From positions 9,796,001 through 9,860,000 of the forward strand of contig NC_087259.1 in the NCBI RefSeq assembly GCF_037042905.1: 64,000 nt of DNA, read 5' to 3'. Below, piece by piece: positions 23,150-64,000 of this stretch. How positions within the stretch are numbered: position 1 is the stretch's first letter; each line of letters begins with the position of its first letter. The notes below the pieces were generated by a model, which had not been told where the DNA came from, did not search any database, and worked only from the letters and a program-made list of their open reading frames with translations. The stretch is from Lytechinus pictus. Its lineage: Eukaryota. A program made the translations under genes and the position numbers.

Positions 23150-23295
23150 TTAATCACGGGGTACATACAGCAGACGGTTTTCGGTGTCAGAAGGTAGATC
23201 ACTAATAGCATTCTTGGTCGATGTGTCGATCAGGGTCGCCTTAATATCAGCAGGTGAAAGGTTGGGATTCTTAGCTAGCAGTAGTGCTACAGCGC
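23150..23295 (-). CDS. Subtilase left copy exon 8 (terminal)
   Basis: ttccacag|GC GCT...; (G)[47 protein letters not shown]. Confidence 0.9.
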
Positions 23296-35200: not shown

Positions 35201-38200
35201 TCTTTCGTACTTCTGTAGAAATTGGAAGCTATTTGCATATCGTTGTCTCTCCATTCTTTTTACCTCCATGGTTCAATTATCAACTAAGTGCGTGGGGACA
35301 CGTAATGATTCCAAGCACTGATCTGATAGTATTCAGATCAGCAATCTGTATACAGATCAATGATTATAAGTTGCTAATTCATTTCATGACAACGAACGTA
35401 CAGGGCGTCAACCCATTGTTGTCGGTGTTGCTGCCCTCTACGTTTGTTGTTTCATGATTTCAAGTTGGTTATGCATATATTCATTTCCATTGATTATACC
35501 TTTTGAAGAGCTGTGTTGGTCAGTTTAGCTGAAAACCCATTGATGGCAGCAGTGTAGGTGTGCTTGATAGAAACATCGCCGAAACGTCCCGAGAGGTCAG
35601 TCAGAAGAAGTTTCTTGATCACTTCTACGTCATAACCGGGCTGCATGATCAAATAAACAATCAATACTTTTGATAATATTTGATTTTACAATAACATAAT
35701 TTTAACGATTTTTTTAGTATTTCACAATAATATATTGAAACGAAAAAAATGTAATGTTTCACACTTAAAATTCTGCATGACGTCACATTTCATTTTTCTT
35801 TTTTATATTCATCGATCATTATATTATACCTCGAAGGAACATGATTAAACAACATCCACACTCCAAGTTTGGTAGGTATATGTAAACGTGACACCAGATA
35901 ATATTATGACCACATGATTTCCTTACACTTACATACAGAGGGAGGGGGTGGCTTTCGGGCCACGTATACCCACACATTATTTTCCAAGACAAAGAAAAGT
36001 TGCACAACAAAAAGAGAAAAGCAAAGGGTGAAATACGGAAATCCATCCCAAAATTTCATGTTTGTATTATTAAAGGTTAATGTTTGTTGCTCGTTAGCAG
36101 GGTTTTTATAACATATCCCCCATACGCTATGTCTGGGTCCTGACATTGTTGTGCTCATTTAGTCACCGATTCCTGTTTAGCCCAATTGAAATCCTTTCTG
36201 TAATATTTCCCTGGTTCTAAAAGATATAATGGTGATACAATTCATAATTTATAAATCTTCATCACACATACTCATGACCATCTGAAATTGAATTCCGTTT
36301 TTCCTTCTTTTGGAATTACAAATGGGCAGTGGCGTAACAGGCGGGGGGGGGCAGAGCTCACCGGGAAAAAAAACCGGGAAAAAGAAAAAAAAAAGGGGGA
36401 AGAAAGGGAAAGGGAAAGGAAAGAAAAAAGGGGGAAGGGAAAGGAAAAGGGAAAAGAAAACTAAGAAAAAACATAAAAAAGGGAAAACGGAAAGATAACG
36501 GGAAAAGGAAGGAAAAAAAAACAAGTGACAAAGAACAATTCGCCCCGATATACAAATACATTAGCATGATTAGTAAGACAGGGAAATAAATTAAAGATGA
36601 CAAAAAGGCAAACAAAAGCGGGAAATAAAGGCAGAATGGAATTAGCCAAAATCTAAATTGGAAAATAAAGAATAGGGACAAGATAACGTACACTACCGGG
36701 CTGCCGAGGATTGAGATAACGAGCGGGAAGAAAAACGGATGGTATATAGCATAATGTCGTATGAAAGTCTATCATAAACTTGCTAAATCTCCTAAGGCTC
36801 TGTCCAAGAGTCAAGACCCCGTGCAGTGGGGGCTCTTCATCTGTAACCTTTAATGGGTTCTATAACGGGCCCTTATATGGACCCTTCCTGCATTAAGCTT
36901 TACGTTGAAGCACTGGCGTACCGGGGGGTGGTTCCACAGCCAAGGGGAAATAAAAGAAAATAAAGGAGGCAGCGAAATGAGATGAATGAAAAGAAATATA
37001 TGACATGATATTTGCTATAATAATGTAAAAATCTATCACATAATTAGAATTTCATTTCAACAGGCCTTTTTTTTTTGGCTCGCTTCGCTCGCTGGCGACT
37101 TTTTACAAATTTTCCCACATTTGCTATGGTGTGCCCCTCACAATATTTGGATGATTACGATACACAATTGCATTGAATTTATGTGTTGTGTTAAAGTTAT
37201 ATAAATATACACGCAATTTGATTAAAATAAGTGGCCATCTGTAAGGTTTAAAATGGCTTTGATATCAAGAGGTTCCGGGGCTCTGCCCTGGAGCCACCCA
37301 TAAAGCACTGTTATATGGATGAGTTTGGACCATGGCCCCCAAAAGTTCTACAACCAAACAAACAAAATGAGGAAAGAAAGGAAAGTGTATTATATTTTTC
37401 TGAATATCACGTTAAAATCTATCTTCATGTTAGATTCTCATGAAAAGGTGATTTTTTATCTCGCTCGCTTCGCTCGCTCGGGACCTATATTAAGCTACTT
37501 CTTGCCAAAAGCGCCATACTCGGCCCCCTCAAGCATATAGAGCTTCGCCCTGATGCTCACAATCATAAGTTCATAACAAAAATCCTGTTCACCGTGGCGT
37601 ACAAAAAAAAGAGAGAAAAAGAGGAAAGAGAGGAGGGTGAATATGATATCATCTTTTTAACATTATGTCAAAATCTATCACAAAATTGGATTTTTTGCAA
37701 TAAAGATGTCAAAAATATTTTGCTCGCTCACTTCGCTCGCTCGCTTATATATATATATACATTTGCCCGATACGCCATATCGCCCCCTCAAAATTTTTGC
37801 CTTATGACGCCATTGCCTGTTCAATGATATGAACGGAAAATGTTTGGTTTAGTATCTGCGCTATATAGATGGTCCATATTATTATTATTATAAAATGTCG
37901 AATGATTTCTGAAATGACCCGGTCGATCGACACATAATTTTCTGTTCAGATATGAAATATCAGATATCAACTGGTAGTGAACAGCTGTCCCTTTAAAGGA
38001 GAAATATATTGAAAATCGTAAAAATGGAGAATCATATATCAAATCAAAGGAGAAAATAAGGAGAACACGATGGTGTACATCATTTATCATGGAGACCGAT
38101 GGAACTCAGTTAATTGATAGTTTAAAGTTCTCTCTCTGAATGCTTCAAACACGCAGAATTACGTCCGCGAAATTGGGGATTTTTTATGACGTCACTTTCT

Positions 38201-41200
38201 GTACGAGAGGCGTGATTGGCCCTCCCACGTGAAGCTCCACTTGCATGCAAAACCTGTTGCGAGGGTACGTTTTCTCCACATTGTCACTGAATACTTCGAT
38301 CACGAAATGAAAGAAAACCCAGAATTTTATCTAGATTTGGATTTTCAAATTGATGATTTTGAAGATGAAGAGAATGATGATGAAGTGCACAAAGTGACGT
38401 AGTTGGGGGTAAATTGGGGGAATCGATGATGAGGAGTCGGACAATTCAACTTGCAACACGATCACATGCCGATTCGCTACCAACTCATGCAGCTGCTAAG
38501 TGCTAGCTGCACCGCGCGTGCCAAATTGAATTCACGAAAATGACTTACCACACTGTCCAGACAGAGTCTCTTACTTCTGTGACTATGAAGAAGGAAAATA
38601 ATGATAAAACTGTACTTACAAATAAGTGAATGTAATCCGAACCTGAAGGCAAATCAACTCAACGAATAGCAGCAGACGATATGCACCGATGATAAACTTC
38701 ATGTGGCTGGGATAGATTGTCACTCGTTCTGTTAGATGTAATTTTTATCTCATTAATTTGACAAAATTACGAAACTCGGGGAATTATTTATCTATATAAA
38801 AATATAGTAACATCTCGTATAATTTTTAAATTACGATAAAACGTTTTTTGAAGGAAAACGTTGAGGTAAAATTAAATTAGACGTAAAAGATCCCCAACAT
38901 GCGTAGCTTGATTGAGAGCTGTGCAACACGTGCATAGATCTACTCTCTCAGCCACTGGCGAGCAAGCAATACGGCATGTTTGTGATTTTGATTACGATCA
39001 CATATACGAGCTTTTAAAAGGTTTTATCGTAATTTAAAAAATAATACGAGATGTTACTATATTTTTATATAGATAAATAATTCCCCGAGTTTCGTAATTT
39101 TGTGAAATTAATGAGATAAAAATTACATCTAACAGAACGAGTGACAATCTATCCCAGCCACATGAAGTTTATCGTCGGTGCATATCGTCTGCTGCTATTC
39201 GTTGAGTTGCCTTCAGGTTCGGATTACATTCACTTGTTTGTAAGTACAGTTTTATAATTATTTTCCTTCTTCATAGTCACAGAGGTAAGAGACTCTGTCT
39301 GGACAGTGTGGTAATTCATTTTCATGAATTCAATTTGGCCCGCGCGGTGTAGCTAGCACTTAGCAGCTGCATGAGTTAGGTAGCGAATCGGCATGTGATC
39401 GTGTTGCAAGTTGAATTGTCTGACATCATCGGCGTAATTCCCCAATTTTACCTCCAACTACGTCACTTTGTTGTTCATTTCATCATCATTCTCTTCATCT
39501 TCAAAATCATCAATTTGAAAATCCAAATCTAGATAAAATTCTGGGTTTTCTTTCATTTCGTGATCGAAGTATTCAGTGACAGTGTGGAGAAAACGTACCC
39601 TGGCATTAGGTTTTGCATGCAAGTGGAGCTTCACGTGGGAGAGCCAGTACGCATCTCGTACAGAAAGTGACGTCATTAAATTCAAGTCAATTCAGAGACC
39701 GATGCGAGGCATATTTCGGAGAGGCATTTTGAGCGTTTTTTAATCGGCGATTTTCACCTTATGTATTATTTTCGTTATTTTTGAATGACCCACTGATAAT
39801 CCCCACATCATTACCTTTCCATTGACATATAATAAGACCACATTCATAATCAATATAGTTCTCCTTTAATATCATCCCAACGTGTTAAATTGATTTTAAG
39901 TGCAATTTTAACACTCGTGTCGCATGGAGACATTCTTAACGCGTATGAGACTTTCATATGGTTGTGCTACACAAACAGCGAAAGTGGACTGTTCTCAAAG
40001 CCGACGTCGGAATTTTGTGTATCACCAATTTTTCTTCTTGTTGTTGTTCCTTTATTTTATTTTATTTTATTTTTATTTTTTTTTATTGCTGGACTGACGC
40101 CGCCTCGGACTGAGTCCACATTTGGAAGTTGTTTGAAGGCGCCTTTAGTTCTACAGTTGGTATGTGTATCACCTCCAAGTGGACTCATGTCGGCTTTGAT
40201 CACTGAACTAGAAATAGCAAACAACAGTTATTGCTAACGAAATATGGAAAATGTTGGCGTGAAAAGAACGGCGACTCGTGTCACGTAAATAGGCGTCATC
40301 GGGGCCTGCTTTACGTGCATCAGGGAATATTGATCTCGAAGCGGCTTATTGTGTCCACTTTCGGCGTAAGTGTAACGCCACCAACAGTGCAGGCGCGAAG
40401 GTGGCTTGATAGGCGGGGTCGGAGACGGCTTGAAACCAGGCGAATGTGTATCAGCGGCCGTAGTGACCTACATATAGAGCTTCTTAAACTGACGCCAGCA
40501 TTGTTACGTGTCTTTTTATTATTTTTCCAGGGTTTTTTTTTTTGCATTTCATTGATTTTGATTTTAGACCTTGAGATCCCATGAGCTTCGAAGAGCGATC
40601 CGATCTTTCCTTACTGAAACTCTAAACCGTGATCTGCATAAAATCTGATTTTCGGTTTAATTCGATCCGATTTTCATTTAATTCTCAAAATCCCTTCATT
40701 GTTCATGCTACAAACAGCTCGGGTCTTATCTATATGTCGCTGCTTAGCCTCTTTTCCCGGCCGCGATTTTTCTTTTGTCGAGACTTGTGCACCCGATGCG
40801 AGTGGGTTTATTTAATCAGACTACGCCTCATGAATATTCATGGCTCGACTCGATTGGTGTGGCTCAATCAGTAAACCAATCCTGCAGTCGGTCTCAAGGA
40901 CGCAGGTTCGAGTCTCGAATGGAACGCCTTTTCACAGTTTTTGTTTTCATTAAAAGAAAATAAAAAGTCCAAGATTTGTGGTCTGATTCAAAGCCCATAC
41001 GAAACAGCCTATTATTATCGTCATTCCCACTGCCCTCTCGCGTCGGGTGCACAAGTACTGATGAAGAAAAAAAAATCGCATCCCGACTCCTTTTCGCCTT
41101 CTGCATACACTTGACGTCATGCCCTGGAACATCTCCATCTTAACATTTCCTTTGCATTTTCTCGGGATTAATTATTTATCGATACGATAATTTCAGTTTG

Positions 41201-44200
41201 GTGATAATTATTTAGCTATACGTATATATACAAAGTACTAGGCGTGCTGCAACGCTTTTAGAATGGGGGAACGAAGCTATAGGGGGCCGGGGGGGGGGGG
41301 CTTTCTGATGAAGTATAATATTTGCGTTTAGAGAGCATTTATAATAATTTTCTTTGGATTTAACCTTACTTAAAATTCACTGCGAAGAACTATTATCGTA
41401 TCTGACGAAAACTGTTCATTTTACTAAGTACGCACAGAGCGAGCGATCGTTAATGAGCTCTCAGAGTCTATCCGATTAGAAACTAATGTTTACATCAAAA
41501 TGATATCTCAGTTATACTTTCCTACCGTTTTGAGGGCGTTCCACGGTAAGAATGAGGTCCATGCCATTTTCATCAAATTCGACAGAGAGTAAAGATTAGA
41601 ACCTAAATATTCCATGAATAAAAAAGATAACACGAGTACACGTGCTTGATTTTTGTTTCTTTATTTCTTGCTATCGAGCTCTGAGGTTCACCCAATTGAG
41701 AGTTCTCGAGAATTACCCAATCAAAATAACTGGGCATATTTTTACACCTCACGAGATCACAAGGTTGAGTTTAAACCTCTATTACTCTAGTTAAAATCCA
41801 TTTGAATCTCATCACATTTTACAGTTCAGGATTGTATACCAAAGATGGCAAATCCATTTAATAATATTCATTTGCCATGTTCGCTCTTTTAAGGCTAGCA
41901 GCACCTTTATTTACGAAAAAAAATAGGTGAAAGATAACAAAAATACATCCTAAATATTCGAAATTTCTATAACGAATTAAAGAAGTACAATTAATGCTGC
42001 ACCTTCTTGAAAAACAATGCCATTTTCACCAAAAATTTGCAAAGTTCATGTGCTTGTTTGAATCACCTGTTCATTCATTGTGACATCATTGCGCATTGTG
42101 TGAAATGTGCATTCCCAGTCAGGATCGTTGCCCCCCCCCCCCGAAATTTTGAAAACTGAAAACAGTATAGTAAATGATGCCATAAGTATCCTACTCAAGA
42201 TGTAAAGTGCTCCAAAGCAGCATTTTTATCTCTTCAAATTTTAAAATGTACCCATCCGGTCACTGTTGGCTTCCAACACTATTTGTCACTAAGTCTACAT
42301 TGACTTGAATTATCTGACTATTATGTGCATCATTTGAGCTTAAAACTGCTTTATAATGCAATGTTTTACCATTGAAAAATAATACAATTTTCTAGCTATA
42401 CAACACCGCTTCCTCGTAGACATGGTAGATAAGCAATTTAATTTTTTTTTACTAGCTATGAGGTACCACAAATTCCTGTTTCCCTGATTTATATACTTAT
42501 CTAATTTTCAAAAAAAAAGAAAACGGATACATCTACAATACTATTTTTTTTTCTAAAAGCACACAACTTTTTTTAGATAGAAATAATCCTCACTCCGTCT
42601 AATAGAATTATTCCTGTCCCTAAAAAATATATTTGTTTGTTATGTATGAAAAAATAAAATATGAAAAGAAGACAGATATTAATTAGAAATGAGTTAATTC
42701 GGTTGTTTTCAAGGGGGTGGGATCCAGAGCGCTTCGCCTCTCCCCAATTGGCGGTGCCAAACAGTGAATGAGAGGAAGAAGAAAAGGAAGATAAGGAGTA
42801 AGAACAGTAAATGAAATAAAGGGAGGGGAATGATTGGAAATTGGATATATTTTTTCGCGTTAATATATAAAAATCAAAATTTCGCGCGCGCAGTGGCTGA
42901 TGTTGAATGATATAAATAAAAGGTCTGCTCAATAGGCCGGATAAAACGGAGCTTACTTATAAATCAAATTAAGCAAAAAATCATACACAAATGATTCTTC
43001 TCGCGTCTCGAGTTTGCATTATTTGTTTTTAGCGTAATGCGCATCCTGCACTATTTTATTCATATTTACAAAATAGTTACAAAATTTTCAGCTCGCGCTA
43101 CGCACTGGCATCAGCTGTTTAGTTAGATACCCTGTTCATGGTTACTAAAAACGTTCGGAAAGTCCAGCTATTATCTCAGAATATCAACAATTTTTAGCCC
43201 ACGCGTCGCACTCGCATTATTTATTTGGTAAGATATTATTTTCATTATTCACTGCAAACAGTCATTAACATGTTTCTTTTCAGGTCAGTATATCAACAAT
43301 TTGAGCTCCTGCTTCGCTCTCGACTTTTTGAACATGCAAAAAAAATTCGTGTCCGCCTTTGCCACTCTCTAAATATTCTTCTGCCCCACTTGCCTCTCCC
43401 CTAGTTCATATTATAAAAAAAAATCCTGGTGTTGCCACAGTATATCTCTTTGTATCAACGATTTACACGCTTTTCACATTCGTAGTTATTGAATTCAACA
43501 ATCGTAATAATTGTATATTACCCAGTTGTTGTGTGTCCGGACAGGTTGTGTGTCCGGACGATCAATTTTAGAAAGTCATTCGGAAAAAAATACAAGCGAA
43601 GTTTCATCAATTTTTAGTACAAAATGTTAGGAAATATTATAGAGAACAAAATAGTAGATGATTACAACTATTGAATTCACATTTTTAGTGTAATCCAAAG
43701 ACAAAAAAGAAGGCTTCAAAAATATAGTGTCCGGACACCCGACCCCCATCCTACTGTATATGCTAATAAATGGATATAGTTCTTCGATGATTATATATCA
43801 TGTTTATACCTTAATAATCAGTATCAATGCGTAATTATATATAGATTCAATGATCCCTCCAGACTACATGTAGCGTGCAAAGAGTCACACATTTCCATTT
43901 CGGTCTATTCTTAATTGTCACGAGCCTAATTGCAACATGAACGCACAAGATATTTATTCTACCGATATTTTATTTCTTACAAACAGGTTATTTACAAAAG
44001 AGTATTCATATGATTCGCCATTAACACTAAGGAATGGCTAGCACCGATCATCCTATTCCAATATGGTGAAGAAATATCACTGAACATTTGGAGCTACTTG
44101 TCTGGCGGAAGAATTAGAAATATTTTATTGTTCAGGTGATGAATTTGATCCCGTCAGGAGATGTCGTCATAAAAGTCGAATTCGTTTTTTTTTTAATGAA

Positions 44201-45465: not shown

Positions 45466-46323
45466 CTTGCTTCTTCGCTGTTCGATCCTTGCTCGCCAAA
45501 GACGATTTAAAATCTTGCTCATGAACAATCTATATTTATGCGTGAAAGTTTTAGCGGTATCACTGACTAAAGGTATAATCCAAGTGTTACAAAAAGAATT
45601 ACAAACCTGGCACAATTCGAATCGGCTTTCACGCATCGGTGGGAGCTAATGATCGGTAAACCCCCTATCCGCATGATCCGCCAGAAGTGTTATTATCCAT
45701 TTTATTCTACATTTATCAATTCTGTATCAATTTTGATCCATAAGTTTCTTATGGATCGATAATCCTAAGGAAATGACACTCGCATGATTGTTTTGGACAA
45801 ATCTCAGATCAGATTACATTAAGATTTAAAAAACGGCTTAAACGAAGGATTGATCTATATTCACCTTTGCTCTTTGGATTTCCAATGTCTGCCGAGGACT
45901 TTGTCCCATTTTGTAGAGCACTGTTCTTTGTCACTTTTCTGACAGACCATTCAATGTAAGCTGCTTTTAATCTTAATGTGATATGATCTGAGATTATTCC
46001 AAGATAATCTTGCAAGACCGATTTATCGATTTCCCTTATAAAAAAACAACTTATGGCCCAAATTAAATACAAAATTGATAAATGTATAATAAAATGGATA
46101 AGAACATGCACTCCTGTCGGGTAGGGGGGGGTCACCGATCATTAGCTCCCACCAATGCGTGAAAGCCGATTCGAATTGTGCCAGGTTTGTAATTCTTTTT
46201 GTAACACTGGGATTATCTTTAGTCAGTGACACCGCTGAAACTTTCACGCATAAATATAGATTGTTCATGAGCAAGATTTTAAATCGTCTTTGGCGAGCAA
46301 GGATCGAACAGCGAAGAAGCACG
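45466..46323. promoter_or_regulatory. Shared bidirectional promoter/5' region of the two subtilase genes
   Basis: 858 bp lie between the divergent ATGs, with mirrored TATA-like CATAAATA at 46249-46256 (+) and 45533-45540 (-), ~70 nt upstream of each ATG. Confidence 0.6.
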
Positions 46324-46437
46324 ATGAAGTTGATTGTCGTAATTTTGTCAGCTTTAGTGGTAGCCACAAGTGCTAAAAATGCAACATTCTACACGGTGGA
46401 AGAGGCAATTAAAGACCATTACATAGTTGTACTGAAG
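46324..46437 (+). CDS. Subtilase right copy exon 1
   Basis: The 114-nt CDS is identical to the reverse complement of 45352-45465; donor gtgagt. Confidence 0.9.
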
Positions 46438-49400
46438 GTGAGTCAGTGTCGCTCAGACTACATTCCCTTGTCGATCCCACCTTCTTCATTATGCCCCCGT
46501 TTCTAAGACAAGCAGAGTCTCATCCGAAGCCATTCTGATCCCTAAAATCATCTTAAGGCTGTCTGATATGACATTAGGGATGGTTTCTTTTAGTGTACAT
46601 ATTATGTCAGAACTTGTTTTTATGTCGGAACTTAAAGATTGTTTACTAACGTGCGCCGAGTCATTCTCAAGCTAGTTTGACATTTTCCCTTTTAATTATG
46701 TATATTATCAAGTGATTTGATATGAAGTTTGAATAATGATAATAATATACCAAAGTGAACATACAATGAATGATACTTAACTAAGACTAGTGATGAGATA
46801 TTATGGTTCAATGAACTCTGAACTTAGTTCAGAGTTCTTTATTTCATATTACGTCCCTCATCATGAATTTTGTTTTATTGCACACTTTTGATGCAACAAT
46901 CTTACAACTTGTAAGACTGTTACATCTAAAGTGTAGGCCCTACATTAAAAGGAAATGACGACGTCACGAGTACTCTTTAATACTTTTTTGATGAGCCTCA
47001 ATGATTTTAAGCAAACGCTATATAATTTACGCATTAAATTTTATTAACTATAATTAATCACATTGTTTAACCCCACCACTCTATCAAGTTGTTTAAATTG
47101 TTAAATGATTGTTATTTCTTGTAAATTGTTTTTAAGACAAATTGTTAATAACTTTAAATAACCTGTTTAGAACTTTTAACAATAGTTGTTAGAGTGGCGT
47201 GTTTAAACAACGTGATTAATGTGTGGGGTTGCCACGCAGAAAATGCAAATTTGTTCAATGTTTTGCTTGTCAGTTATGCATATATTATTATTGTTTTTTC
47301 TTTGTTAATGTGTTTATGAAAAGTGTTGCAGAAATCAATAAATGAAACAAATATACTAGTTTATGCGCCTCGGACCAAGGAGACAATCAATCAGTGCCAC
47401 TCGTGCAAATAATATTTCTTAGACCCGTGTAATAAAACGGCACATTAAAAAGTCATTAAAATAATGCTGAAATTAGACGGTCTAATATTTATTACCAGTG
47501 GATAGGCTACATATCTGACGTTCCATATTCGACCAGAAAAAGGTACATCGACCCGCTCATTAAAGAAAAAACGAATTCGACGTTTATGAAGATATCTCCT
47601 GACGGGAGCAAATTCATCACCTGAACAATAAAATATTTCTAATTCTTCCGCCAGACAAGTAGCTCCAAATGTTCAGTAAATATTTCTTCACCATATTGGA
47701 ATAGGATGATCGGTGCTTGCCATTCCTTAGTGTTGATGGCGAATCATATGAATACTCTTTTGTAAATAACCTGTTTGTAAGAAATAAAATATCGGTAGAA
47801 TATAAATATCTTGTGCGTTCATGTTGCAATTAGGCTCGTGACAATTAAGAATAGACCGAAATGGAAATGTGTGACTCTTTGCACGCTACATGAAGTCTGG
47901 AGAGATCATTGAATCTATAATTACGCATTGATACTGATTATTAAGGTATAAACATGATATATAATCATCGAAGAACTATATCAATTTATTAACATACACA
48001 GTATAGGTTAGAGGGGGAAATTTATATACAATTATTGCGATTGTTGAATTCAATAACTACGAATGTGAAAAGCGTATCAATCGTTGATACAAAGAGATAT
48101 ACTGTGGCAACACCAGGATTTGTTTTATAATATGAACTAGGGGAGAGGCAAGTGGGGGCAGAAGAATATTTAGGGAGTGGCAAAGGCGGACACGAATTTT
48201 TTTGCATGTTTCACAAAGTCGGGAGCGAAGCATGAGCTCAAATTGTTAATATACTGACCTGAAAAGGAACCTGTTAATGACTGTTTGCAGTGAATCATGA
48301 AAGTAATATCTTACCAAATAAATAATGCGAGTGCGACGCGTGAGCTGAAAATTGTTGATATTCCGAGATAATAGCTGGACTTTCCGAACGTTTTCAGTAA
48401 CCATGAACAGGGTATCTAACTTAACAGCTGATGCCAGTGCGTAGCGCGAGCTGAAAATTTTGTAACTATTTTGTAAATATGAATAAAATAGTGCAGGATG
48501 CGTATAACGCTAAAACAAATAATGCAAACTCGAGACGCGAGAAGAATCATTTGTGTGTAATTATTTTTTTTTTTAATGGATTTATAAGTAAGCTCAGTTT
48601 TATCCGGCCTATTGAGCAGACCTTTTATTTATCTCATTAAACATCAGCCACTGCGCGCGCGAAATTTTGATTTTTATATATTTACGCGAAAAATATATCC
48701 AATTTCCAACCATTCCCCTCCCTTTATTTCATTTACTGTTCTTACTCCTTATCTTTCCTTTTCTTCTTCCTCTCATTCACTGTTTGGCGCCACCAATTGG
48801 GGAGAGGCGGAGCGCTCTGGATCCCATGCACCCCCTTGAAAACAACAGAATTAACTCATTTCTAATTAATATCTGTCTTCTTTTTATATTTTATTTTTTT
48901 CATACATAATAAACAAATATATTTTTTAGGGACAGGAATAATTCTATTAGACGGAGTGAGGATTATTCCTATCTAAAAAAAGTTGTGTGCTTTTACAAAA
49001 AAAACATAGTCTTGAAGATGTATCCGTTTTCTTTTTTGAAAGTTAGATAAGTAGATAAATCAGGGAAATAGGAATTTGTGGTACCTCATAGCTAGTAAAA
49101 AAAATTAAATTGCTTATCTACCATGCCTACGAGGAAGCGGTGCTGTATATAGAAAATTGTATTATTTTTTTTATGGTAAAACATTGCATTGTAAAGCAGT
49201 TTTAAGCTCAAATGATGCACATAATAGTCAGATAAATCAAGTCAATGTAGACTTAGTGACAAATAGTGTTGGAAGCCAACAGTGACCGGATGGGTACATT
49301 TTAAAATTTGAAGAGACAAAAATGCTGTTTTGGAGCACTTTACATCTTGAGCAGGATGCTTATGGCAGCATTTACTATATTGTTTTCAGTTTTCAAAATT

Positions 49401-52400
49401 TGGGGGGGGCAACGATCCTGACTGGGAATGCACATTTCACGCAATGCGTAATGATGTCACAATGAATGAACAGGCTGCAGAATGAGAGTTGTTTGGAATT
49501 TGGCGCGTTTATGATATTTTTTTAAACTTTGATCCAACAAAAGTGCGGGGGGGGGGGCAACGATCCTGGCTGGGAATTCACATTTCACGAAATGCGCAAT
49601 GATGTCACAATGAATGAACAGGCTGCAGAATGAGAGTTGTTTGGAATTTGGCGCGTTTATGATATTTTTTTTACTTTGATCCAACAAAAGTGCTGGTAGT
49701 GTGAAAACAAGCACATGAGCTTTGCAAATATTTGGTGAAAATGGCATTGGTTTTTAAGAAGGTTCAGCATTACTTGTACTTCTTTAATTCGTTATAGAAA
49801 TTTTTAATATTTAGGATGCATTTTTGTTATCTTTCACCTATTTTTTCGTAAATAAAAGAGCGAACATGGCAAATGAATATTATTAAATGGATTTGCCATG
49901 TTTGGTATACAATCCTGAACTGTAAAATGTGATGAGATTCAAATGGATTTTAACTAGAGTAATAGAGGTTTACACTCAACCTTGTGATCTCGTGAGGTGT
50001 AAAAATATGCCCAGTTCTCTCGATTGGGTAATTTTCGAGAACTCTCAATTGGGTGAACCTCAGAGCTCGATAGCAAGAAATAAAGAAAAAAATCAAGCAC
50101 GTGTACTCATGTTATCTTTTTTATTTATGGAATATTAAGGTTCTAATCTTTACTCTCTGTCAAATTTGATAAAAATGGCATGGATATCATTCTTACCGTG
50201 GAACGCCCTTAAAACGGTAGGGAAGTATAACTGAGATGTCATCCATGCACTAGCGTACCTACGGGGGGAGGGGGGGGGGGGGCAGGGGGGGCACTCTGCC
50301 CCCCCTGACGAGCAACAACCCATACAAAAGACATATACCTGCCCCCCCCCTGACGAGCTTAAAATACCTTTTTGCCCCCCCCCCCCTGATGAGCTTGAAG
50401 ACCTTTTTTTATTTTTTTTATTATTATTTTTTTTTTTGCTTGTCAAATTTTTTTCTGGTACGAAAACCTATATTTTTGTATTGAAGACCTTTTTTTTTTT
50501 TTTTTTTTTTTTTGCTTGTCAATTTTTTTTCTGGTACGAAAACCTATATTTTTTTATTGAAGACCTTTTTTTTTTTTTTGGCTTGTCAAATTTTTTGGCG
50601 GCCGATTTTGCCCCCCCCCCCCTGTGGAAAATCCTAGGTACGCCACTGCATCCATGTAACTTATATCTGTTCAAATGTTTGTAATTATTATTTTGTTCAT
50701 GATTTATACTCTATTGTTTTATGTTTTTCAACTTTTATGTACGGACTTGCTGAAAAACAGCCTTGCGGCTGAAAGCAGGATTTTTATCCCGTAATCAAAT
50801 AAATAAAACATACATACATACATACATTTTGATGTATACTTTAGTTTCTATTCGGATAGACTCTGAGAGCTCTGCGCGTACAGTGTACTTAGTAAAATGA
50901 AAAGTTTTCTTTGGATACGATAATAGTTCTTCGCGGCAGTGAATTTTAAGTCAGGTTAATTCCAAAGAACTTTATTATAAATGCTCTCTAAACGCGAATA
51001 TTATAATTCATTAAAAAGTCCCCTCCCCCCCCCCCCCCCCCGTGTTAGCTTCGTTCCCCCAATACTAAAAGTGTCCCGGTACGCCTAGTATTTTGAATAT
51101 ATACGTATAACTAAATAATCATCACCAAACTAAAATTATCGTTTTGATAAATAATTAGGAAATGCAAAGAAAGTGTTAAGATGGAGATGTTCCAGGGCAT
51201 GACGTCGAGTGTATGCCGAAGGCGAAAAGGAGTCGGGATGCGATTTTGTTTTTTCGTCAGTACTTGTGCACCCGACGCGAGAGGGAAGTGGGAATGACGA
51301 TAATAATAGGCTGTTTCGTATAGGCTTTGAATCAGACCACAAATCTTGGACTTTCTATTTTCTTTTAATGAAAACAAAAACTGTGAAAAGGTGTTCCATT
51401 CGAGACGCGAACTTGCGTCCTTGAGACCGACTGTGGGATTGGTTTACTGATTGAGCTACACCAAATGAATCGAGTCGATTGATGTGTCAGAAATTGCGAT
51501 GTAATTAACGTTTCGTGTCAATGAATATTCATGAGGCGTAGCCTGACTAAATGTCCCGACAAAAGAAAAATCGCGGCCGGGAAAAGAGGCTTAATAATTA
51601 AGCAGCGACATAATAAGACCCAAGCTGCTTGTAGCATGAATAATGAAGGGATTTTGAGAATTAAATGAAAATCGGATCGAATTAAACCGAAAATCAGATT
51701 TTATGCAGATCACGGTTAAGAATTTCAGTAAGGAAAGGGAAGAGTAAAGAACAAGAAAGGTTGGATCGCTTTTAGTAGCTTATGGGATCTTAAGGTCTTA
51801 AATCAAAATCAATGAAATGCAAAAAAAAAACCTGAAAAAAAATAACAAGAACTTCTATCTATCCAACCAGACACGTAACACAGCTCTATTATGAAGGTCA
51901 CTGCGGCCGCTGATACACATTCGCCTGATTTCAAGCCGCCCCCGACGCCGCCTTTGAAGCCACCTTCGCGCCTGCATTGTTGGTGGCGTTACACTTTATA
52001 GCCGAAAGTGGACACAATAAGCTGCTTCGAGATCAATAGCCCCCTGATATACGTAAGCAGGCCCCATGTCGCCTATTAACGTGACACGAGTCGCCGTTCT
52101 TTTCACGCCAATATTTTCCATTGTTCGCTAGCAATTACTATTGCTATATGATCTATATCTAGTTCAGTGATCAAAGCCGACATGAGTCCACGAGGTGATA
52201 CACATACCAACTGTAGAACTAAAGGCGCCTTCATACAACTTCCAAATGTGGACTCAGTCCGGGGCGGCGTCAGTCCAGCAATAAAAAAACACAAAACAAA
52301 ACAAAATAAAGGAACAACAACAAGAAGAAACATTGGTGATACACAAAATTCTGACGTCGGCTTCAGTCCACTTTCGATGTTTGTGTAGCACAACCATATG

Positions 52401-55400
52401 ACAATCTCATGCGCGTTAAGAATGTCACCATGCGACACGAGTGTTAAAATTGCACTTAAAATCAATTTAACAAGTTGGGATGATATTAAAGGGACTGCTC
52501 TTCACTACCAGTTGATATCTGAACAGAAAATTATGTGTCGATCGACCGGGTCATATCAGAAATCATTCGGCATTTTATAATAATAATAATAATATGGACT
52601 ATCTATATAGCGCAGATAATATATTAATATACTCTAATGCGCTTAAAAATTGGTATCATAATTATTATTATCCCGGCTGTAGCCGAGCCGCCATACAGGC
52701 GCTCAAGCATTCGATGAAAATCCTTCCTACCGGGTACCCATTCACCTCACCTGGGTTGAGTGCAGCACAATGTGGGTAAATTTCTTGCTGAAGGAAAACA
52801 CGGCATGGTTGGGATTAGAACCACGTCCCTCAGATCGCAAGACGAGAGTCGTATAACCCCTAGACCACGACGCCCCCATCTTATAAAAACATCTCCTGGG
52901 GCCCGTAACACAAAGCTTAGCAATGGTCGTAGAAAATTTGTCTACGATTGATTGCATTGACTACAGTGTACAATCAATCGTGAAAATCATGCGTACGATC
53001 AATTGCTAACCTTTGTGTTGTGGGACCCTGATGAGATCTAATTGAAACGGTGAAATAGCCTCAATTACACAGACAGTAACATAGTTTCAAAAGCTAAGTG
53101 ATATTTTTTTTCCCATTTGGGTTAAGGAAGTTCAGTGACATCGGCGGATCCAGGGGGGTGGCGCAGGGGGCGCGCGCCCCCCCTAATATTTGAGCGGCGC
53201 CGCTCCAAATAAATAATAAAAGAAAAGTAAAAGAAAGAAAAGGCGCGCCGCTTGAAAAAATAAAAATAAAGGAAAGAAAAGAAAAGGCGCTTCTTAAAAA
53301 AATATACACTGGTATAACATTAGAAAAAGTAAAGAAAAGACTATCCACCAGCAAAGCACAATCATATCATCTTCCTTATCTTTTCTTTTAACTACCTTTT
53401 TACCAATAACTTCGCCGGTAGCAGTGCGCTGCCTGCATCTCACTGGCGCCAATCAAGAATAATCAGCGCCACCTAAATCTAAATCGGCGCCGGACAAGAA
53501 TAATCGGCGCCATCTGGTTATAAATCGGCGCTGCCTTAGTCTTAACCGGCGCCGATCAAGAATAATCAGCGCCACCTAAATCTAAATCGGCGCCGGACAA
53601 GAATAATCGGCGCCATCTGGTTATAAATCGGCGCTGCCTGAGTCTAAACCGGCGCCGATCAACTTAAATAATCAGCGCCACCTAAATCTAAATCGGCGCC
53701 GGACAAGAATAATCGGCGCCATCTGGTTATAAATCGGCGCCGGTAAAGAGAAATTGGCGCTGCCTGCGTTCTTAACCGGCGCCGATCAAGGATAATCAGC
53801 GCCACCTATATCTAAATCGGGGCTGGTCAAGAATAACCAGCGCCATCTGGTTGTAAATCGACGCTGCCTGAGTCTTAACCGGCGCCGATCAACTTAAATA
53901 ATCAGCGCCACCTAAATCCAAATCGGCGCCAGACAAGAATAATCAGCATCACCTGGTTAAAAATCGGCGCCAGTCAAGAATAATCGGCGCCTCCTAGTTC
54001 TAAATCGACGCATATATTGCCGCTGCCTGAATCTTATGTGACGTCGGTAAAAAATAATCAGCACTACTTGTTTAAATCGGCGCCGGTCAAGACAAATCGG
54101 CGCTGCATTTGTCGTAACCGGCGCCACCTAAATCTAGATCGGCGCCAGTCAAGAATGATAAGCGGCACCTGGTTATACATTGTATTGTTGAATGGTCATA
54201 ACGAATAACTGGGGCGGGACAGTTGCCCACAGATGTCATGAAATCTTTAATTTTTTATTTTAAAAAATCCCAGAATCATACAAAAGTGTAGAGCAAATCC
54301 TTTAATTTTGATCTTATTTTCCAATGCTTTAGTAAGAAAAGGTGAGATTGAGCTTCACAACTCGTTCTTTATTTAAAATCGTGCTCAAATTGTCCGCTTT
54401 TCAGATTGGAATATAAAAAATTTCAGCTCGCGCTTCGCGCTCGCATCATTTCTGTAGCAAACCCCCATACTTTTCATGATTAAATAGGTGAATAGAATGT
54501 CTCGTTTTCAGTTCTGAACCTCAAAAGAACTCCCGCTTCTATTTGCAATGATCTATTGTTGGATATAATCTTGTTCTATATCAAAAACGTACATTGAACT
54601 TTTTTTTTTTTTCAGATCGAAATATCAAAATTTTAAGCTCGCGCTTTGCGCTCGCATCTATTGTTTTTTTTGTTGTAGATACCCATCTTAATCATTGGTA
54701 CCAAAAATGCTTAGAATATCGAGCATTTAATTTTGCCAGAATATAAAGAAATTTCAGCTCGCCCTCGGCACTCGCATTATCTGTGTAGTGAGATATGTAT
54801 CCTCCTCATGAGTTACTACAAACAGTCCTAAAAAGGCACCTTTTTCCTGCTTTCAGGTCAGTATACTTAAAAAATTTCAGCTCGCGCTTCGCGCTCGCAT
54901 TAATTTGTTGGTGAGATTTGTGTCTCTATCTCATGAGTCATATAAATAAATCGCACATAACATGCATAATTTGTGTTACTTTTTGCTTGTTACTTTCTTT
55001 GTTAAGTTTTTCTATCCCTCTCTATATATCTTTTAGAAAGATTATACTTATGTATATTTTCTGTTATAATGAGATTTAAGTGGACTTCAGGGAATGGCTG
55101 TACGCAGCAAGGGGGAAGGGGGGGGGCAAATTCGCGATCAGCTGTTGTGAAAAACAATTTTTTCCCCTTAACATTTCATGAAAACTATGAAAAATGTGCA
55201 CCAAATACTTATATTACACTTGTAAAAAAAAAATCGTCCCATTGAGCAGCTCGGTCCGTTTACTCTTTCGTTTTTTGTTTGTTTGTATTTTTCTAAAATT
55301 TGTTCTAGTCTCGTCCCCTCCCGGAAATATTATCTTCGTGTGGTCATGCAAAATGTCATGACTTGAAATCCTACATTTTGAAAAGGACATTTGACAGGGT

Positions 55401-58364
55401 CAGACTTTACCCCTTTTTCAACATTTTCTTTTATGGCGCCGGTGAAGTGCAAAAATATGTGCGCCGCTCGGCAGTGCGCCCCCCCCTTTCGCCAAAAGCT
55501 GGATCCGCCTATGAGTGATTTGCCCTTCCTAAAATCAATGTTAGATGGCAAATCACATACATACACTTTTGTCATTCACCTATGTATTGGCTCGAATGAA
55601 TATCTTTCCCTTCCTGATGTAATCGTGGTACCCCTAAACCGTAAACTGCCGGTAGAAATAGCAGAAAGATATCAGCTAGCCGATAATGTTGGCCCATTTG
55701 TAATTCCAAAAGAAGGAAAAACGGAATTCAATTTCAGATGGTCATGGGTATGTGTGATGAAGATCTATAAATTATGAATTGTATCACCATTATATCTTTT
55801 AGAAACAGGGAAATATTCCAAAAAGGATTTCAATTGGGCTAAACAGGAATCGGTGACTAAATGAGCACAACAATGTCAGGACCCAGACATAGCGTATGGG
55901 GGATGTGTTATAAAACCCTGCTAACGAGCAACAAACATTAACCTTTAAAAATACAAACATGAAATTTTGGGATGGATTTCCGTATTTCACCCTTTGTTGT
56001 GCAACTTTTCTTTGTCTTGAAAAATAATGTTTGGGTCCGTGGCCCGAAAGCCACCCCCTCCCCTCTGTATGTAAGTATAAGGAAATCATGTGGTCATAAT
56101 ATTATCTAGTGTCACGTTTACATATACCTACCAAACTTGGAGTGTGGATGTTGTTTAATCATGTTCCTTCGAGGTATAATATAACGATCGATGAATATAA
56201 AAAAGAAAAATGAAATGTGACGTCATGCGGAATTTTAAGTGTGAAACACTACTTTTGTTTTGTTACAATATATTATTGTGAAATACTAAAAAAATCGTTA
56301 AAATTATGTTATTGTAAAATCAAATATTATCAAAAGTATTGATTTTTCATTTGATCATGCAGCCCGGTTATGACGTCGAAGTGATCAAGAAACTTCTTCT
56401 GACTGACCTCTCGGGAAGTTTCGGCGATGTTTCTATCAAGCACACCTTCACTGCTGCCATCAATGGGTTTTCAGCTAAACTCAACAACCAGGCTCTCGAA
56501 AAGGTATGTGTATCACATAATCAATGTAAATTAATACATTGGCCTGTTGCGACTCTAGAAATCAAATGCAACTTGATTTTGAGTCAGTCATAGGCGAATA
56601 TTCGAAGTTATTGTGCTTGATCTTTAGAGCGGCGTTTAAACGCAACTCTCTGTAACGGACCCTGGAACTGATAAAGAGAAACAGGGTCGACATGATTTAC
56701 CTAATTGTACACAATTTTGCAGCCCACAAAACCAGAAAAAATGCATTATGAACTTAAAATCATGAAACGAAAGAAAATACAAGTCAGCAACGCCAGGAGC
56801 AATGCGTTGTTGTGAAGTGGATTTCCAATTTGGAATCATTGGTCTGTATACAGATCAGTGCTTGGAACCATTAAGAGATTCTCCTTGTCACTTATACCAT
56901 GGTCATATTTGCTCTACGGCGGCCGTACGGCGAGTCGAAAACAGCCGTTTCAACATTTTTTGGACCAACTACATATAGGTGGTTTGAATTAAAATTAATA
57001 AAACGGCTGTTTTCGACTCGCCGTACGGCCGCCGTAGAGCAAATATGACCAAGGTATTAGTTAGTAATTGAACGCTTTTCGGATTTACTGAGAAAACAAG
57101 CCTTCGTGTAGCTTACCTACATGGCAGAGCACTGAGAACGGCGATTTTTTATCCCAACACACCCGCTTCCCAGGGACACGCTATATTTATTTTCTTATTT
57201 ATTTATTTCTGATATTTTGACAGGGTAGCCCATTCACCAATAAGTAGTGGTCTTCCATGGGGCCCTGAATAAACATATTTACAAAATGCATAACGTATGT
57301 ACAGAATGTTACGGCATTAAGATTCACATTAGGATTTGAATGTAAAACGAAACATTAACAAACTTAGCAGCAAGTACAAAACGCAGACGGGCACTCGTTT
57401 GACGTATAATCAAATATCATTAAAATCAAATTAACTAAGAACGACATCTTGAAAATACTGATAATATACACCAAATCATCAAGGTCATGCTAACACAAAA
57501 TACGCACAACAGTGGATGTTCCGCAAGTTATTTATAAATTACAAGTTCTTTTAAACATTCTCTTAAATGAAATGACAGAAGGAGCTGTTCTAATTGAATT
57601 ATCAAGCTTATTCCATTCCAATATTGAAGAAACAATTGGACATGTCCAATACATATTGCTCTATGGTTTTCGAGCTAATAATGTTTTGCTCTTAAATTTT
57701 ACTCTTAATTAACATATTTCACTCTCGGGCAAAAACATTTGTCACAGTCATATTTGATGTATTATCTCTTGATAGCTTTTGGCCCGAGAGGAGATCAAGT
57801 ACATTACGGAAGATGGTGAAATTCACACTGCGGCTGTTTCGTCTTGGGGTCTGGATCGCATAGATCAGCGTTCATTGCCTCTGGATGGAGCTTACAAGGC
57901 CAAGGGTAAGTTTTATTTTCTTTTTTTATATGATGAATATAATAACCCTTTTAAAGGTATTGTTTAACTTTGTGAGCAGCCGATTTAAAAAATGCTCAAA
58001 CCAAGATGAAACATGTGTACAAGTGCATGTATTAGAACTAATAAACCCTGAAAACAACCATTATTGAGAATGAAAAACTAAAACTACAAGGCAAACCCCG
58101 ATTTTGTAAATAGGCGTCTTATAGACGCCTAAATAGTACACATAAGTGTATGGGATGAAATTAAGATGGTGTTTTCGGTCACTTTATATTTCAATTTTTT
58201 AAGCACTAAATAATTATTTTAGAACGCAATTTTTTTCTGGGATTCATTTTTGTAACATATCACAGACACAGGTGACAAGTCTGACCTTCTAGCTCAGATT
58301 TTTTAAAAGTCAAACCAATGTTAACCAATCACTTTAACTGTTGCAATCATATCTTCCTTCCTTG

Positions 58365-58403
<39 letters not shown>

Positions 58404-61949: not shown

Positions 61950-62145
61950 GTAAGTTGCGCGCAAGCCATAAAGTTGGTCGACCTTAAGCATATGACGTCA
62001 TGATGTCATAGCGCATTTTATCAGATGATTAAAATTAGATAAAATTATGATTAAATAAAATTATAATTAAGATTAACGTATTCATATAATCGTCGCCATT
62101 TGGATTAACGTCCAATGGGCTTTCCCGTCGCGGAAGCCCTACTAA

Positions 62146-63990: not shown

Positions 63991-64000
63991 TTACGAAGGC

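What the first reader, a model, noticed from the sequence alone, without database searches (positions are those of the whole stretch)
35500..56503. Head-to-head protease pair on a ~21-kb palindrome with only a ~110-bp spacer
Seen: two subtilase genes diverge from ATGs 858 bp apart, and reverse-complement homology runs from ~45842/45953 out to exon 2, covering both ~10-kb first introns. Established: long inverted repeats with short spacers are recombinogenic and can be maintained by arm-to-arm conversion (as in mammalian Y palindromes). Inference: a palindromic two-gene module with one mirrored promoter, which may also flip orientation between haplotypes. This is the best candidate for an undescribed system in this window.
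Basis: partly seen in the sequence, partly recalled or inferred. Interest (0 to 1): 0.75.

Follow-up and report, generated by a model that had tools for sequence, protein, structure and literature searches.

The report
Mirror-image protease gene pair, partly homogenised
Two neighbouring sea-urchin protease genes that point away from each other look like a 21-kb palindrome because about 10 kb of one gene's front end was copied, in mirror image, over the other's after the species split from its sister species; this is a clean but ordinary case of gene conversion between inverted duplicates.

Summary
Two complete 8-exon secreted subtilase genes (I9 propeptide plus S8 domain) diverge from ATGs 859 bp apart. 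Here they are called SubL (- strand, 383 aa) and SubR (+ strand, 381 aa). Mirror homology runs from 45840/45957 out to 35475/56539, around a roughly 130-bp unique centre.

It is not a palindrome kept identical by ongoing conversion. The arms are 94% identical, with differences spread evenly, and each arm carries its own young transposon insertions. Mirror homology continues over both whole genes at only 67-79%, so the inverted duplication is old.

The genome is Lytechinus pictus. L. variegatus has the same head-to-head pair (ATGs 858 bp apart), but its near-identical arms are only about 620 bp long. Both L. pictus arms are collinear with the L. variegatus SubR-side intron 1 (JC distances 12.8% and 13.4%) and are 5.6% from each other. 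Just outside the arm, SubL returns to orthology with the L. variegatus SubL gene.

So one long, non-reciprocal SubR-to-SubL transfer occurred in the L. pictus lineage. It ends inside exon 2 (35520-35563) and stops about 200 bp short of the centre. The centre has evolved by orthology and has the same orientation in both species. No read data spans the centre, and transcript evidence exists for SubL only. This is a new member of a known kind, and not a new system.

The parts
23150..45465 (-). SubL gene, CDS start to stop (383 aa). Exons: 45465-45352, 35640-35500, 34972-34843, 29008-28893, 27613-27472, 25941-25751, 24055-23884, 23295-23150.
   Evidence: tblastn of homologues. GT-AG splice sites were read from the sequence. 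The open spliced ORF carries the D/H/S triad. It is 99.2% identical to P0152 'extracellular serine proteinase-like [Lytechinus pictus]'.
46324..64000 (+). SubR gene, 5' part (381 aa in all). Exons in the window: 46324-46437, 56363-56503, 57776-57905, 61834-61949. Exons 5-8 lie beyond the window at 64792-64933, 66461-66645, 69539-69710 and 70536-70681 (L001).
   Evidence: It is 98.2% identical to P0151 'aqualysin-1-like [Lytechinus pictus]'. Pfam PF00082 and PF05922 match individual exons.
35475..45840 (.). Left arm of the high-identity inverted repeat. The converted (recipient) tract is about 35540-45690.
   Evidence: It is collinear with the L. variegatus SubR-side intron 1 at 79-91%, but only about 72% to its own orthologue.
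45957..56539 (.). Right arm of the high-identity inverted repeat, the donor type.
   Evidence: It is collinear and on the same strand as the L. variegatus SubR-side intron 1.
45833..45962 (.). Unique centre (spacer), about 130 bp. It is single-copy in the genome.
   Evidence: Orthologues are more alike here than paralogues: LpL-LvL 79% and LpR-LvR 82%, against 64-66% for paralogues.
45700..45832 (.). Innermost left arm: decayed, unconverted homology (68-74% to the right side).
   Evidence: Informative sites follow orthology.
45963..46100 (.). Innermost right arm: decayed, unconverted homology.
45352..45640 (-). Left copy of the conserved core, comprising the 5'UTR or proximal promoter block (with a TATA-like CATAAATATAG about 65-75 nt upstream of the ATG and an upstream ATG) plus exon 1.
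   Evidence: 278 of 300 alignment columns (93%) are invariant across the four sequences of the two species, and all 5 informative sites are of the concerted type. A 170-bp perfect arm-to-arm match starts at the base before the ATG (45466/46323) and covers exon 1 plus about 55 nt of intron 1.
46150..46437 (+). Right copy of the conserved core (5'UTR or proximal promoter block plus exon 1).
35520..35563 (-). Outer breakpoint interval of the conversion tract, inside SubL exon 2. This is a 44-nt stretch nearly identical in all four sequences. Its equivalent in SubR is 56440-56483.
   Evidence: In the four-way alignment the last SubR-type site is at 35564 and the first SubL-type site is at 35519. 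Outside the arm, 34403-35460 is 84.5% identical to the L. variegatus SubL side.
36350..37847 (.). Transposon copy private to the left arm (about 1.5 kb).
   Evidence: It is 93-97% identical to at least 15 copies elsewhere in the genome and absent from the right arm.
37993..39860 (.). Foldback-like transposon private to the left arm (about 1.87 kb). It has internal inverted arms of about 670 bp (38182-38847 and 39016-39680).
   Evidence: It is 96-98% identical to at least 20 genomic copies.
53139..55514 (.). Transposon copy private to the right arm (about 2.4 kb).
   Evidence: It is 98-99% identical to 4 other genomic copies.
23125..23358 (-). Exon 8 region, a possible second, short conversion patch.
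   Evidence: It is 92.7% identical at the nucleotide level to 70473-70703, against 67-79% around it, with dS 0.05. The four-way test is mixed (C 6, O 18, with the O sites mostly in the flanks), so this is inconclusive.

Best explanation
An old inverted (head-to-head) duplication of a whole 8-exon proteinase-K/aqualysin-like secreted subtilase gene predates the split of Lytechinus pictus and L. variegatus. The ancestral pair already had a short mirrored core of about 600 bp per side (5' region plus exon 1) around an asymmetric centre.

In the L. pictus lineage, one long non-reciprocal recombination event (long-tract gene conversion or break-induced copying) then copied about 10 kb of present-day sequence from the SubR side onto the SubL side. 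The copied tract runs from about 200 bp off the centre, through the 5'UTR, exon 1 and all of intron 1, into exon 2. It overwrote SubL's own intron 1 and ended in a 44-nt stretch of exon 2 that is nearly identical in all copies.

The two arms have since diverged by about 5.6% and each has collected its own transposon insertions. As a result the two proteases share the signal peptide and the first half of the propeptide (aa 1-66, apart from one later substitution at residue 57) and a near-identical 5' region, but keep diverged catalytic domains.

Shown: the structure, the gene models, the direction and limits of the tract, and its timing relative to the species split. Inferred: the molecular mechanism, and any regulatory consequence.
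For: 1. Divergence is a mosaic. Inner arms are 94.2% identical. The outer gene halves and 3' flanks are 67-79%. dS is 0.07 for exons 1-2, 0.25 for exon 3 and 0.34 for exons 4-7.

2. L. variegatus orthologues P0153 and P0154 lie head-to-head on CM031029.1 with ATGs 858 bp apart. Their high-identity arms are only about 620 bp long (90%), and their first introns are otherwise unlike each other.

3. Both L. pictus arms are collinear along their whole length with the L. variegatus SubR-side intron 1 (79-91%). Inside the arm, the left arm matches its own orthologous intron at only about 72%. Just outside the arm it matches at 84.5%.

4. A three-way count over 4,893 columns gives JC distances of LpL-LpR 0.056, LpL-LvR 0.128 and LpR-LvR 0.134. 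At 444 sites the two L. pictus arms agree and differ from L. variegatus; 107 changes are private to the left arm and 130 to the right. The arms therefore coalesce at about 0.43 of the species divergence.

5. Informative sites in the first 750 bp either side of the centre (5'UTR, exon 1 and the start of intron 1) give 37 concerted-type and 0 orthology-type outside the central ~330 bp. Within the centre they give 27 orthology-type and 3 concerted-type. Exons 3-7 give 90 orthology-type and 7 concerted-type.

6. The breakpoint maps to 35520-35563 in exon 2.

7. Against an artefact: the arms differ at 370 sites and carry private transposon insertions. The arrangement recurs in an independent assembly of another species. 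L. pictus proteins P0151 and P0152 come from another annotation, differ from the window by 1-2%, and show the same shared N-terminus. A 583-nt contig of run X2 matches 45815-45352 without mismatch and stops exactly at the exon-1 donor site.
Against: - No read or contig spans the centre. Only Logan contigs were available.
- Donor and direction rest on a single sister species, with no third species to polarise the change.
- Even spacing of differences favours a single event but cannot exclude a burst of shorter conversions that then stopped.
- The exon 1 region is more alike than the rest of the arms (170-bp perfect run), so later short conversions or selection also act there.
- The exon 8 patch is unresolved.
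Confidence: 0.85

Rival explanations
1. This is a true maintained palindrome of the mammalian sex-chromosome type. Frequent ongoing arm-to-arm conversion keeps the 10-kb arms alike, and the spacer may flip between haplotypes.
For: It has long arms, a short spacer, and proven concerted evolution relative to L. variegatus. The exon 1 region is 99-100% identical.
Against: Arm identity is 94.2%, with mismatches spread evenly at 92-97% per 500 columns. Outside exon 1 the longest perfect run is 91 bp. Private transposon insertions of 1.5-2.4 kb persist in each arm. The centre has the same orientation in both species.
Confidence: 0.06
2. The long palindrome is ancestral. L. variegatus lost it through turnover of the SubL-side intron 1, and L. 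pictus simply retained and kept converting it.
For: Only one comparison species is available. L. variegatus first introns are larger (19.3 and 13.3 kb), which shows turnover.
Against: The L. variegatus SubL-side intron 1 still shows collinear homology of about 66-85% to the arms. This is roughly the level seen between the outer halves of the paralogues (67-79%), as expected for an unconverted SubL-type intron. The L. pictus arms coalesce well after the species split, so post-split conversion is needed in any case.
Confidence: 0.06
3. It is an assembly artefact, either a fold-back chimera or two haplotypes joined head-to-head.
For: Sea-urchin heterozygosity is of the same order as the arm divergence (my own knowledge). 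No read spans the centre.
Against: A fold-back chimera would give identical arms. Each arm continues in frame into a different, complete paralogue whose outer exons follow orthology with two separate L. variegatus genes. L. variegatus has the same head-to-head layout with the same ATG spacing. The centre is orthologous base for base.
Confidence: 0.02

Closest known systems
Inverted paralogue pairs evolving in concert by gene conversion (textbook example from my own knowledge: Drosophila Hsp70Aa/Ab)
   Same: Two complete genes sit in head-to-head orientation. Over a defined tract the paralogues are more alike within a species than orthologues are between species. The tract has sharp phylogenetic switch points.
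   Different: The tract here is very long (about 10 kb, mostly intron) and covers only the 5' third of the coding sequence. The catalytic domains stay diverged, and the donor and direction can be named.
Large palindromes of primate, mouse and willow sex chromosomes with arm-to-arm conversion (PMC8600007, PMC8981503, PMC7023750, bioRxiv 10.1101/800185)
   Same: Arms are 10 kb or longer around a short spacer, carry genes, and have converted arm to arm.
   Different: Those arms are more than 99% identical because conversion is frequent and ongoing. Here identity is 94% and fits one past event. The locus is in a sea urchin, and the arms hold only gene 5' parts. Chromosome type was not determined.
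Proteinase-K/aqualysin-type subtilases (MEROPS S8A) with an I9 propeptide, expanded in echinoderms
   Same: Pfam PF05922 plus PF00082 match. The Asp/His/Ser triad and a signal peptide are present, and length is about 380 aa. NCBI names for the L. pictus and L. variegatus proteins are 'aqualysin-1-like' and 'extracellular serine proteinase-like'.
   Different: SubL has altered residues next to the oxyanion Asn and the catalytic Ser (AAGN to SARN; GTSMATPHV to GTSVSTTHV). No activity was tested.

Membership tests
Maintained large palindrome (sex-chromosome type) | Inverted arms of 8-10 kb or more around a short spacer | tested here: met
   Arms of about 10.4 and 10.6 kb around a unique centre of about 130 bp.
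Maintained large palindrome (sex-chromosome type) | Arm-to-arm identity above 99%, maintained by ongoing conversion | tested here: not met
   Identity is 94.2% over 6,367 positions with differences spread evenly, and each arm has private transposon insertions.
Maintained large palindrome (sex-chromosome type) | Spacer inversion polymorphism or arm exchange | not testable with these tools
   Between species the centre has the same orientation. No population or long-read data were available.
Inverted paralogues under concerted evolution by gene conversion | Two complete paralogues in inverted orientation | tested here: met
   Both spliced ORFs are open, at 383 and 381 aa.
Inverted paralogues under concerted evolution by gene conversion | Within a tract, paralogues of one species are closer than orthologues; outside it, orthology holds | tested here: met
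   JC distance between the arms is 0.056, against 0.128-0.134 to L. variegatus. Core sites are C 37 / O 0. Exons 3-7 are O 90 / C 7.
Inverted paralogues under concerted evolution by gene conversion | Identifiable tract limits, donor and recipient | tested here: met
   The outer limit is 35520-35563 and the inner limit is about 45680-45707. Both arms are of the SubR type.
Peptidase S8 (subtilase) with I9 propeptide | Pfam PF00082 and PF05922 matches | tested here: met
   PF00082 scores above cut-off on exons 5 and 7. PF05922 scores E = 8e-4 on exon 2 alone. Both domains are precomputed for P0151-P0154, which are 98-99% identical to the models.
Peptidase S8 (subtilase) with I9 propeptide | Catalytic Asp, His and Ser in their motifs | tested here: met
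   The motifs are [13 protein letters not shown] and GTSMA/GTSVS in the translations. Activity was not tested.
Bidirectional promoter pair | Two divergent transcripts starting less than 1 kb apart | tested here: inconclusive
   The ATGs are 859 bp apart. A run X2 contig covers 45815-45352 and ends at the exon-1 donor site, which fits a spliced SubL RNA. No comparable evidence exists for SubR, and contigs cannot show transcript starts.
Assembly artefact (fold-back or haplotype misjoin) | Identical arms, or arms that are alleles of one locus, with no independent support | tested here: not met

The most novel reading that the evidence does not exclude
The conserved head-to-head core (mirrored 5' region plus exon 1 around an asymmetric centre that never converts) might act as a recurrent seed for conversion spreading outward. 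This would repeatedly homogenise the signal peptide, propeptide and 5' regulatory parts of paired subtilase genes while leaving the catalytic domains free to diverge. If so, it would be a general mode of evolution in this expanded echinoderm protease family. A second head-to-head pair on C12 shows the same profile: identity rises from 74% to 96% towards the centre, then drops at the centre itself.
Probability: 0.15. Interest if true: 0.55.

Novelty: new member of a known kind. Interest (0 to 1): 0.4.

Why it matters
This is an unusually well-resolved natural example of a single, very long (about 10 kb) conversion between inverted paralogues. The donor, direction, both end points (one inside an exon) and relative age are all readable from two genomes.

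It shows how an autosome-style palindrome can arise secondarily from an old inverted duplication. It also shows that a diverged centre of about 330 bp persists unconverted.

For annotation, it explains why the two proteases share an identical N-terminus. Exons 1-2 and intron 1 cannot be used to tell the paralogues apart in expression or population data; exons 3-8 must be used. It does not reveal a new kind of genetic system.

Tried and rejected
- **Reads.** Only Logan contigs were served, so nothing spans the centre. Run X1 is patchy and looks genomic. It covers SubR exon 1 but says nothing about transcription. Organism B's 143-nt contig on 45904-45998 (5 mismatches and 1 gap) equals the L. 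variegatus centre sequence seen, so it is the sister species and not a repeat.
- **Spacer as a repeat.** Rejected, because the centre is single-copy in the genome.
- **Ectopic conversion from a third paralogue as the cause of outer divergence.** Rejected. The nearest other paralogue (C2:65.84 Mb) matches only exons, at 74-83%, with no intron homology. The 88% aa match of its exon 7 to SubR is not accompanied by flanking similarity.
- **Faster evolution of one copy.** Tajima's test is not significant (23 against 18 private changes, p = 0.43).
- **Rfam.** No RNA family hit in the window.
- **Fragment alignment A1.** MAFFT smeared the exon fragments. The alignment served only to pull in candidates.
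- **Looking up P0152 in other assemblies.** It is not on record.
- **Literature.** No description of this locus was found, and no usable Lytechinus divergence date, so timing is given only relative to the species split.
- **The search of protein representatives.** It gave family members but no orthologues. It was used only to map exons.
Full report
**1. Observation**

The window is G000:C15:9796001-9860000 of an 812-Mb genome. The repeat finder and BLAST self-comparison show a large inverted repeat. The left arm is 35475-45840 and the right arm is 45957-56539, at 91-97% identity per block. A global alignment of the arms gives 94.2% over 6,367 aligned positions (370 mismatches, 205 of them transitions). 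The mismatches are spread evenly, at 92-97% per 500 columns.

The centre is a unique segment of about 130 bp (45833-45962) that is single-copy in the genome. The innermost ~170 bp of each arm are only 68-74% alike. From about 300 bp outward, identity is 97-100%.

Each arm is broken by a non-homologous block. The left arm holds a 1.5-kb element (36350-37847) and a 1.87-kb foldback-like element (37993-39860). The right arm holds a 2.4-kb element (53139-55514). Each element is 93-99% identical to many copies elsewhere in the genome.

**2. The genes**

Exons were mapped with homologues, and splice sites were read directly from the sequence. This gives two complete 8-exon genes.

- SubL (- strand, 45465 to 23150) encodes 383 aa.
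- SubR (+ strand, 46324 to 70681) encodes 381 aa. Its exons 5-8 lie beyond the window, in L001.

Both have a signal peptide, an I9 propeptide and an S8 domain with Asp, His and Ser in place. The ATGs are 859 bp apart.

**3. The palindrome is the young core of an older inverted duplication**

Mirror homology continues over both whole genes and their 3' flanks, but only at 67-79%.

| Region | dS between the two genes |
|---|---|
| Exon 1 | 0 |
| Exons 1-2 | 0.07 |
| Exon 3 | 0.25 |
| Exons 4-7 | 0.34 |
| Exon 8 | 0.05 |

The nearest other paralogue (C2:65.84 Mb) shares only exon similarity and no intron homology. SubL and SubR are therefore sister genes, and the outer divergence is not due to ectopic conversion. 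Neither copy evolves significantly faster than the other (23 against 18 private changes, p = 0.43).

**4. Species and sister-species comparison**

A profile search returned four close proteins.

| Window gene | L. pictus protein | L. variegatus orthologue |
|---|---|---|
| SubR | P0151 'aqualysin-1-like', 98.2% | P0154, 87.9% |
| SubL | P0152 'extracellular serine proteinase-like', 99.2% | P0153, 88.8% |

Other L. pictus proteins in NCBI sit on a contig of 32,129,000 bp, the exact length of G000:C12. The genome is therefore L. pictus.

In L. variegatus (GCA_018143015.1, CM031029.1) the two orthologues also lie head-to-head, with ATGs 858 bp apart. That species has only about 620 bp of high-identity arm per side (90%). 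Its first introns (19.3 and 13.3 kb) are otherwise unlike each other.

**5. Direction, limits and age of the transfer**

- **Direction.** Both L. pictus arms are collinear along their whole length with the L. variegatus SubR-side intron 1 (79-91%). The left arm matches its own orthologous SubL-side intron only at the old paralogue level of about 72%. Immediately outside the arm (34403-35460), SubL is again 84.5% identical to the L. variegatus SubL side.
- **Age.** Over 4,893 three-way columns, the JC distances are LpL-LpR 0.056, LpL-LvR 0.128 and LpR-LvR 0.134. At 444 sites the two L. pictus arms agree and differ from L. variegatus; 107 changes are private to the left arm and 130 to the right. 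The arms therefore share an ancestor well after the species split, at about 0.43 of that divergence. That ancestor was of the SubR type, so SubR was the donor and SubL the recipient.
- **Outer end.** It lies in exon 2 between 35564 (last SubR-type site) and 35519 (first SubL-type site). The stretch between these sites is nearly identical in all four sequences.
- **Inner end.** It lies about 200 bp from the centre. Informative sites from the centre out to about 45707 support orthology (27, against 3 concerted-type). From about 45680 outward they support concerted evolution (37, against 0).
- **Centre.** It was never converted and has the same orientation relative to the two genes in both species.
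- **Rest of the genes.** Exons 3-7 follow orthology (90 sites against 7). Exon 8 is mixed.

**6. What this means**

However, the picture is of one long past event followed by decay and private transposon insertions. It is not a palindrome kept identical.

The exon 1 region is an exception. A 170-bp perfect match starts at the base before the ATG and covers exon 1 plus about 55 nt of intron 1. The roughly 290-bp block of upstream sequence plus exon 1 is 93% invariant (278 of 300 columns) across all four sequences, against about 13% divergence in the arms' intron sequence. This points to constraint, to later short conversions, or to both.

This block contains a TATA-like motif 65-75 nt upstream of each ATG. 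It also contains an upstream ATG. In L. pictus that ATG is in frame with the main ORF, and the L. pictus protein models in nr (P0151, P0152) start there. In L. variegatus a 7-bp insertion shifts it out of frame. MKLIVV... is therefore the likelier true start.

**7. Expression and assembly evidence**

Only Logan contigs were available. Run X2 has a 583-nt contig (depth 23.8) that matches 45815-45352 with no mismatch. It stops exactly at the exon-1 donor site, with 119 further nt lying elsewhere. This fits a spliced SubL RNA whose 5' end reaches to within about 20 bp of the spacer.

Run X1 covers SubR exon 1 but looks genomic. Nothing spans the centre. Whether the promoters sit at the centre, in the conserved block of each arm, or in both places remains open.

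An artefact is very unlikely, for four reasons.

- The arms differ at 370 sites and carry private insertions.
- Each arm continues in frame into a different gene whose outer exons are orthologous to separate L. variegatus genes.
- An independent assembly of another species has the same layout and spacing.
- A second L. pictus annotation (P0151, P0152) shows the same shared N-terminus.

**8. Comparison with known systems and verdict**

Large palindromes with arm-to-arm conversion are well described on sex chromosomes (PMC8600007, PMC8981503, PMC7023750). Concerted evolution of inverted paralogues is textbook knowledge. This locus fails the '>99% maintained' criterion of the former and meets the criteria of the latter.

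It is a new, well-resolved member of a known kind, with moderate interest. A second head-to-head subtilase pair on C12 has a similar identity profile. That leaves open a more general 5'-homogenising tendency in this gene family, which was not tested further.

Noticed in passing
L009/L010 (G000:C12:5526001-5546000): This is a second head-to-head subtilase pair. Mirror identity rises towards the centre (74%, 82%, 90%, 95%, 96%) and drops to 78% at the centre itself, the same profile as in this window. A third pair (C1:16.92-16.95 Mb, L011-L013) shows only 75-84%.
   Followed up: partly
window 45520-45522 and 46267-46269: An upstream ATG sits 57 nt before each main ATG. In L. pictus it is in frame, and protein models P0151 and P0152 start there, adding 19 residues. 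In L. variegatus a 7-bp insertion puts it out of frame, as an overlapping uORF. The annotated L. pictus start is therefore probably wrong, or the upstream ATG is a regulatory uORF.
   Followed up: partly
window 25751-25941 and 23884-24055 (SubL exons 6 and 7): SubL has changes next to the oxyanion Asn and the catalytic Ser (AAGN to SARN; ISGTSMATPHV to [11 protein letters not shown]). Exon 6 has dN/dS 1.84, on small counts. The L. variegatus orthologue P0153 is intermediate (AALN; GTSMSTVHV).
   Followed up: partly
window 37993-39860: This is a foldback-like transposon with internal inverted arms of about 670 bp. At least 20 near-full-length copies at 96-98% are spread over many chromosomes, so the family was active recently.
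   Followed up: partly
window 53139-55514: This is a 2.4-kb element that is 98-99% identical to four other copies, two of them 36 kb apart on C13. It is a very young insertion.
   Followed up: no
G000:C2:65842703-65842873 (L007): Exon 7 of a more distant paralogue is 88% identical in protein to SubR exon 7, though its other exons are only 50-76% identical. No flanking intron similarity was found, so the cause is unclear (constraint, or an old short conversion).
   Followed up: partly
L015/L014 (L. variegatus SubR-side intron 1; /scratch lv coordinates 52608-54685 and 55090-57157): This is a tandem duplication of about 2.1 kb inside the L. variegatus intron. L. pictus has a single copy of this segment.
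   Followed up: no
SubR exons 3, 4 and 8 (window 57776-61949; L001): The seven residues that differ between the window's SubR and the other L. pictus SubR protein (P0151) include several where P0151 carries the SubL state (for example IHP, NDG, LLAKNP). This may be ordinary polymorphism or short conversion tracts still segregating.
   Followed up: no
whole genome: About 97 exon-level PF00082 matches were found, and about 48 loci hold the Ser-containing exon. Proteinase-K-like subtilases are therefore a large expanded family here, mostly in clusters on C1, C12, C13, C19, C20 and C21.
   Followed up: no
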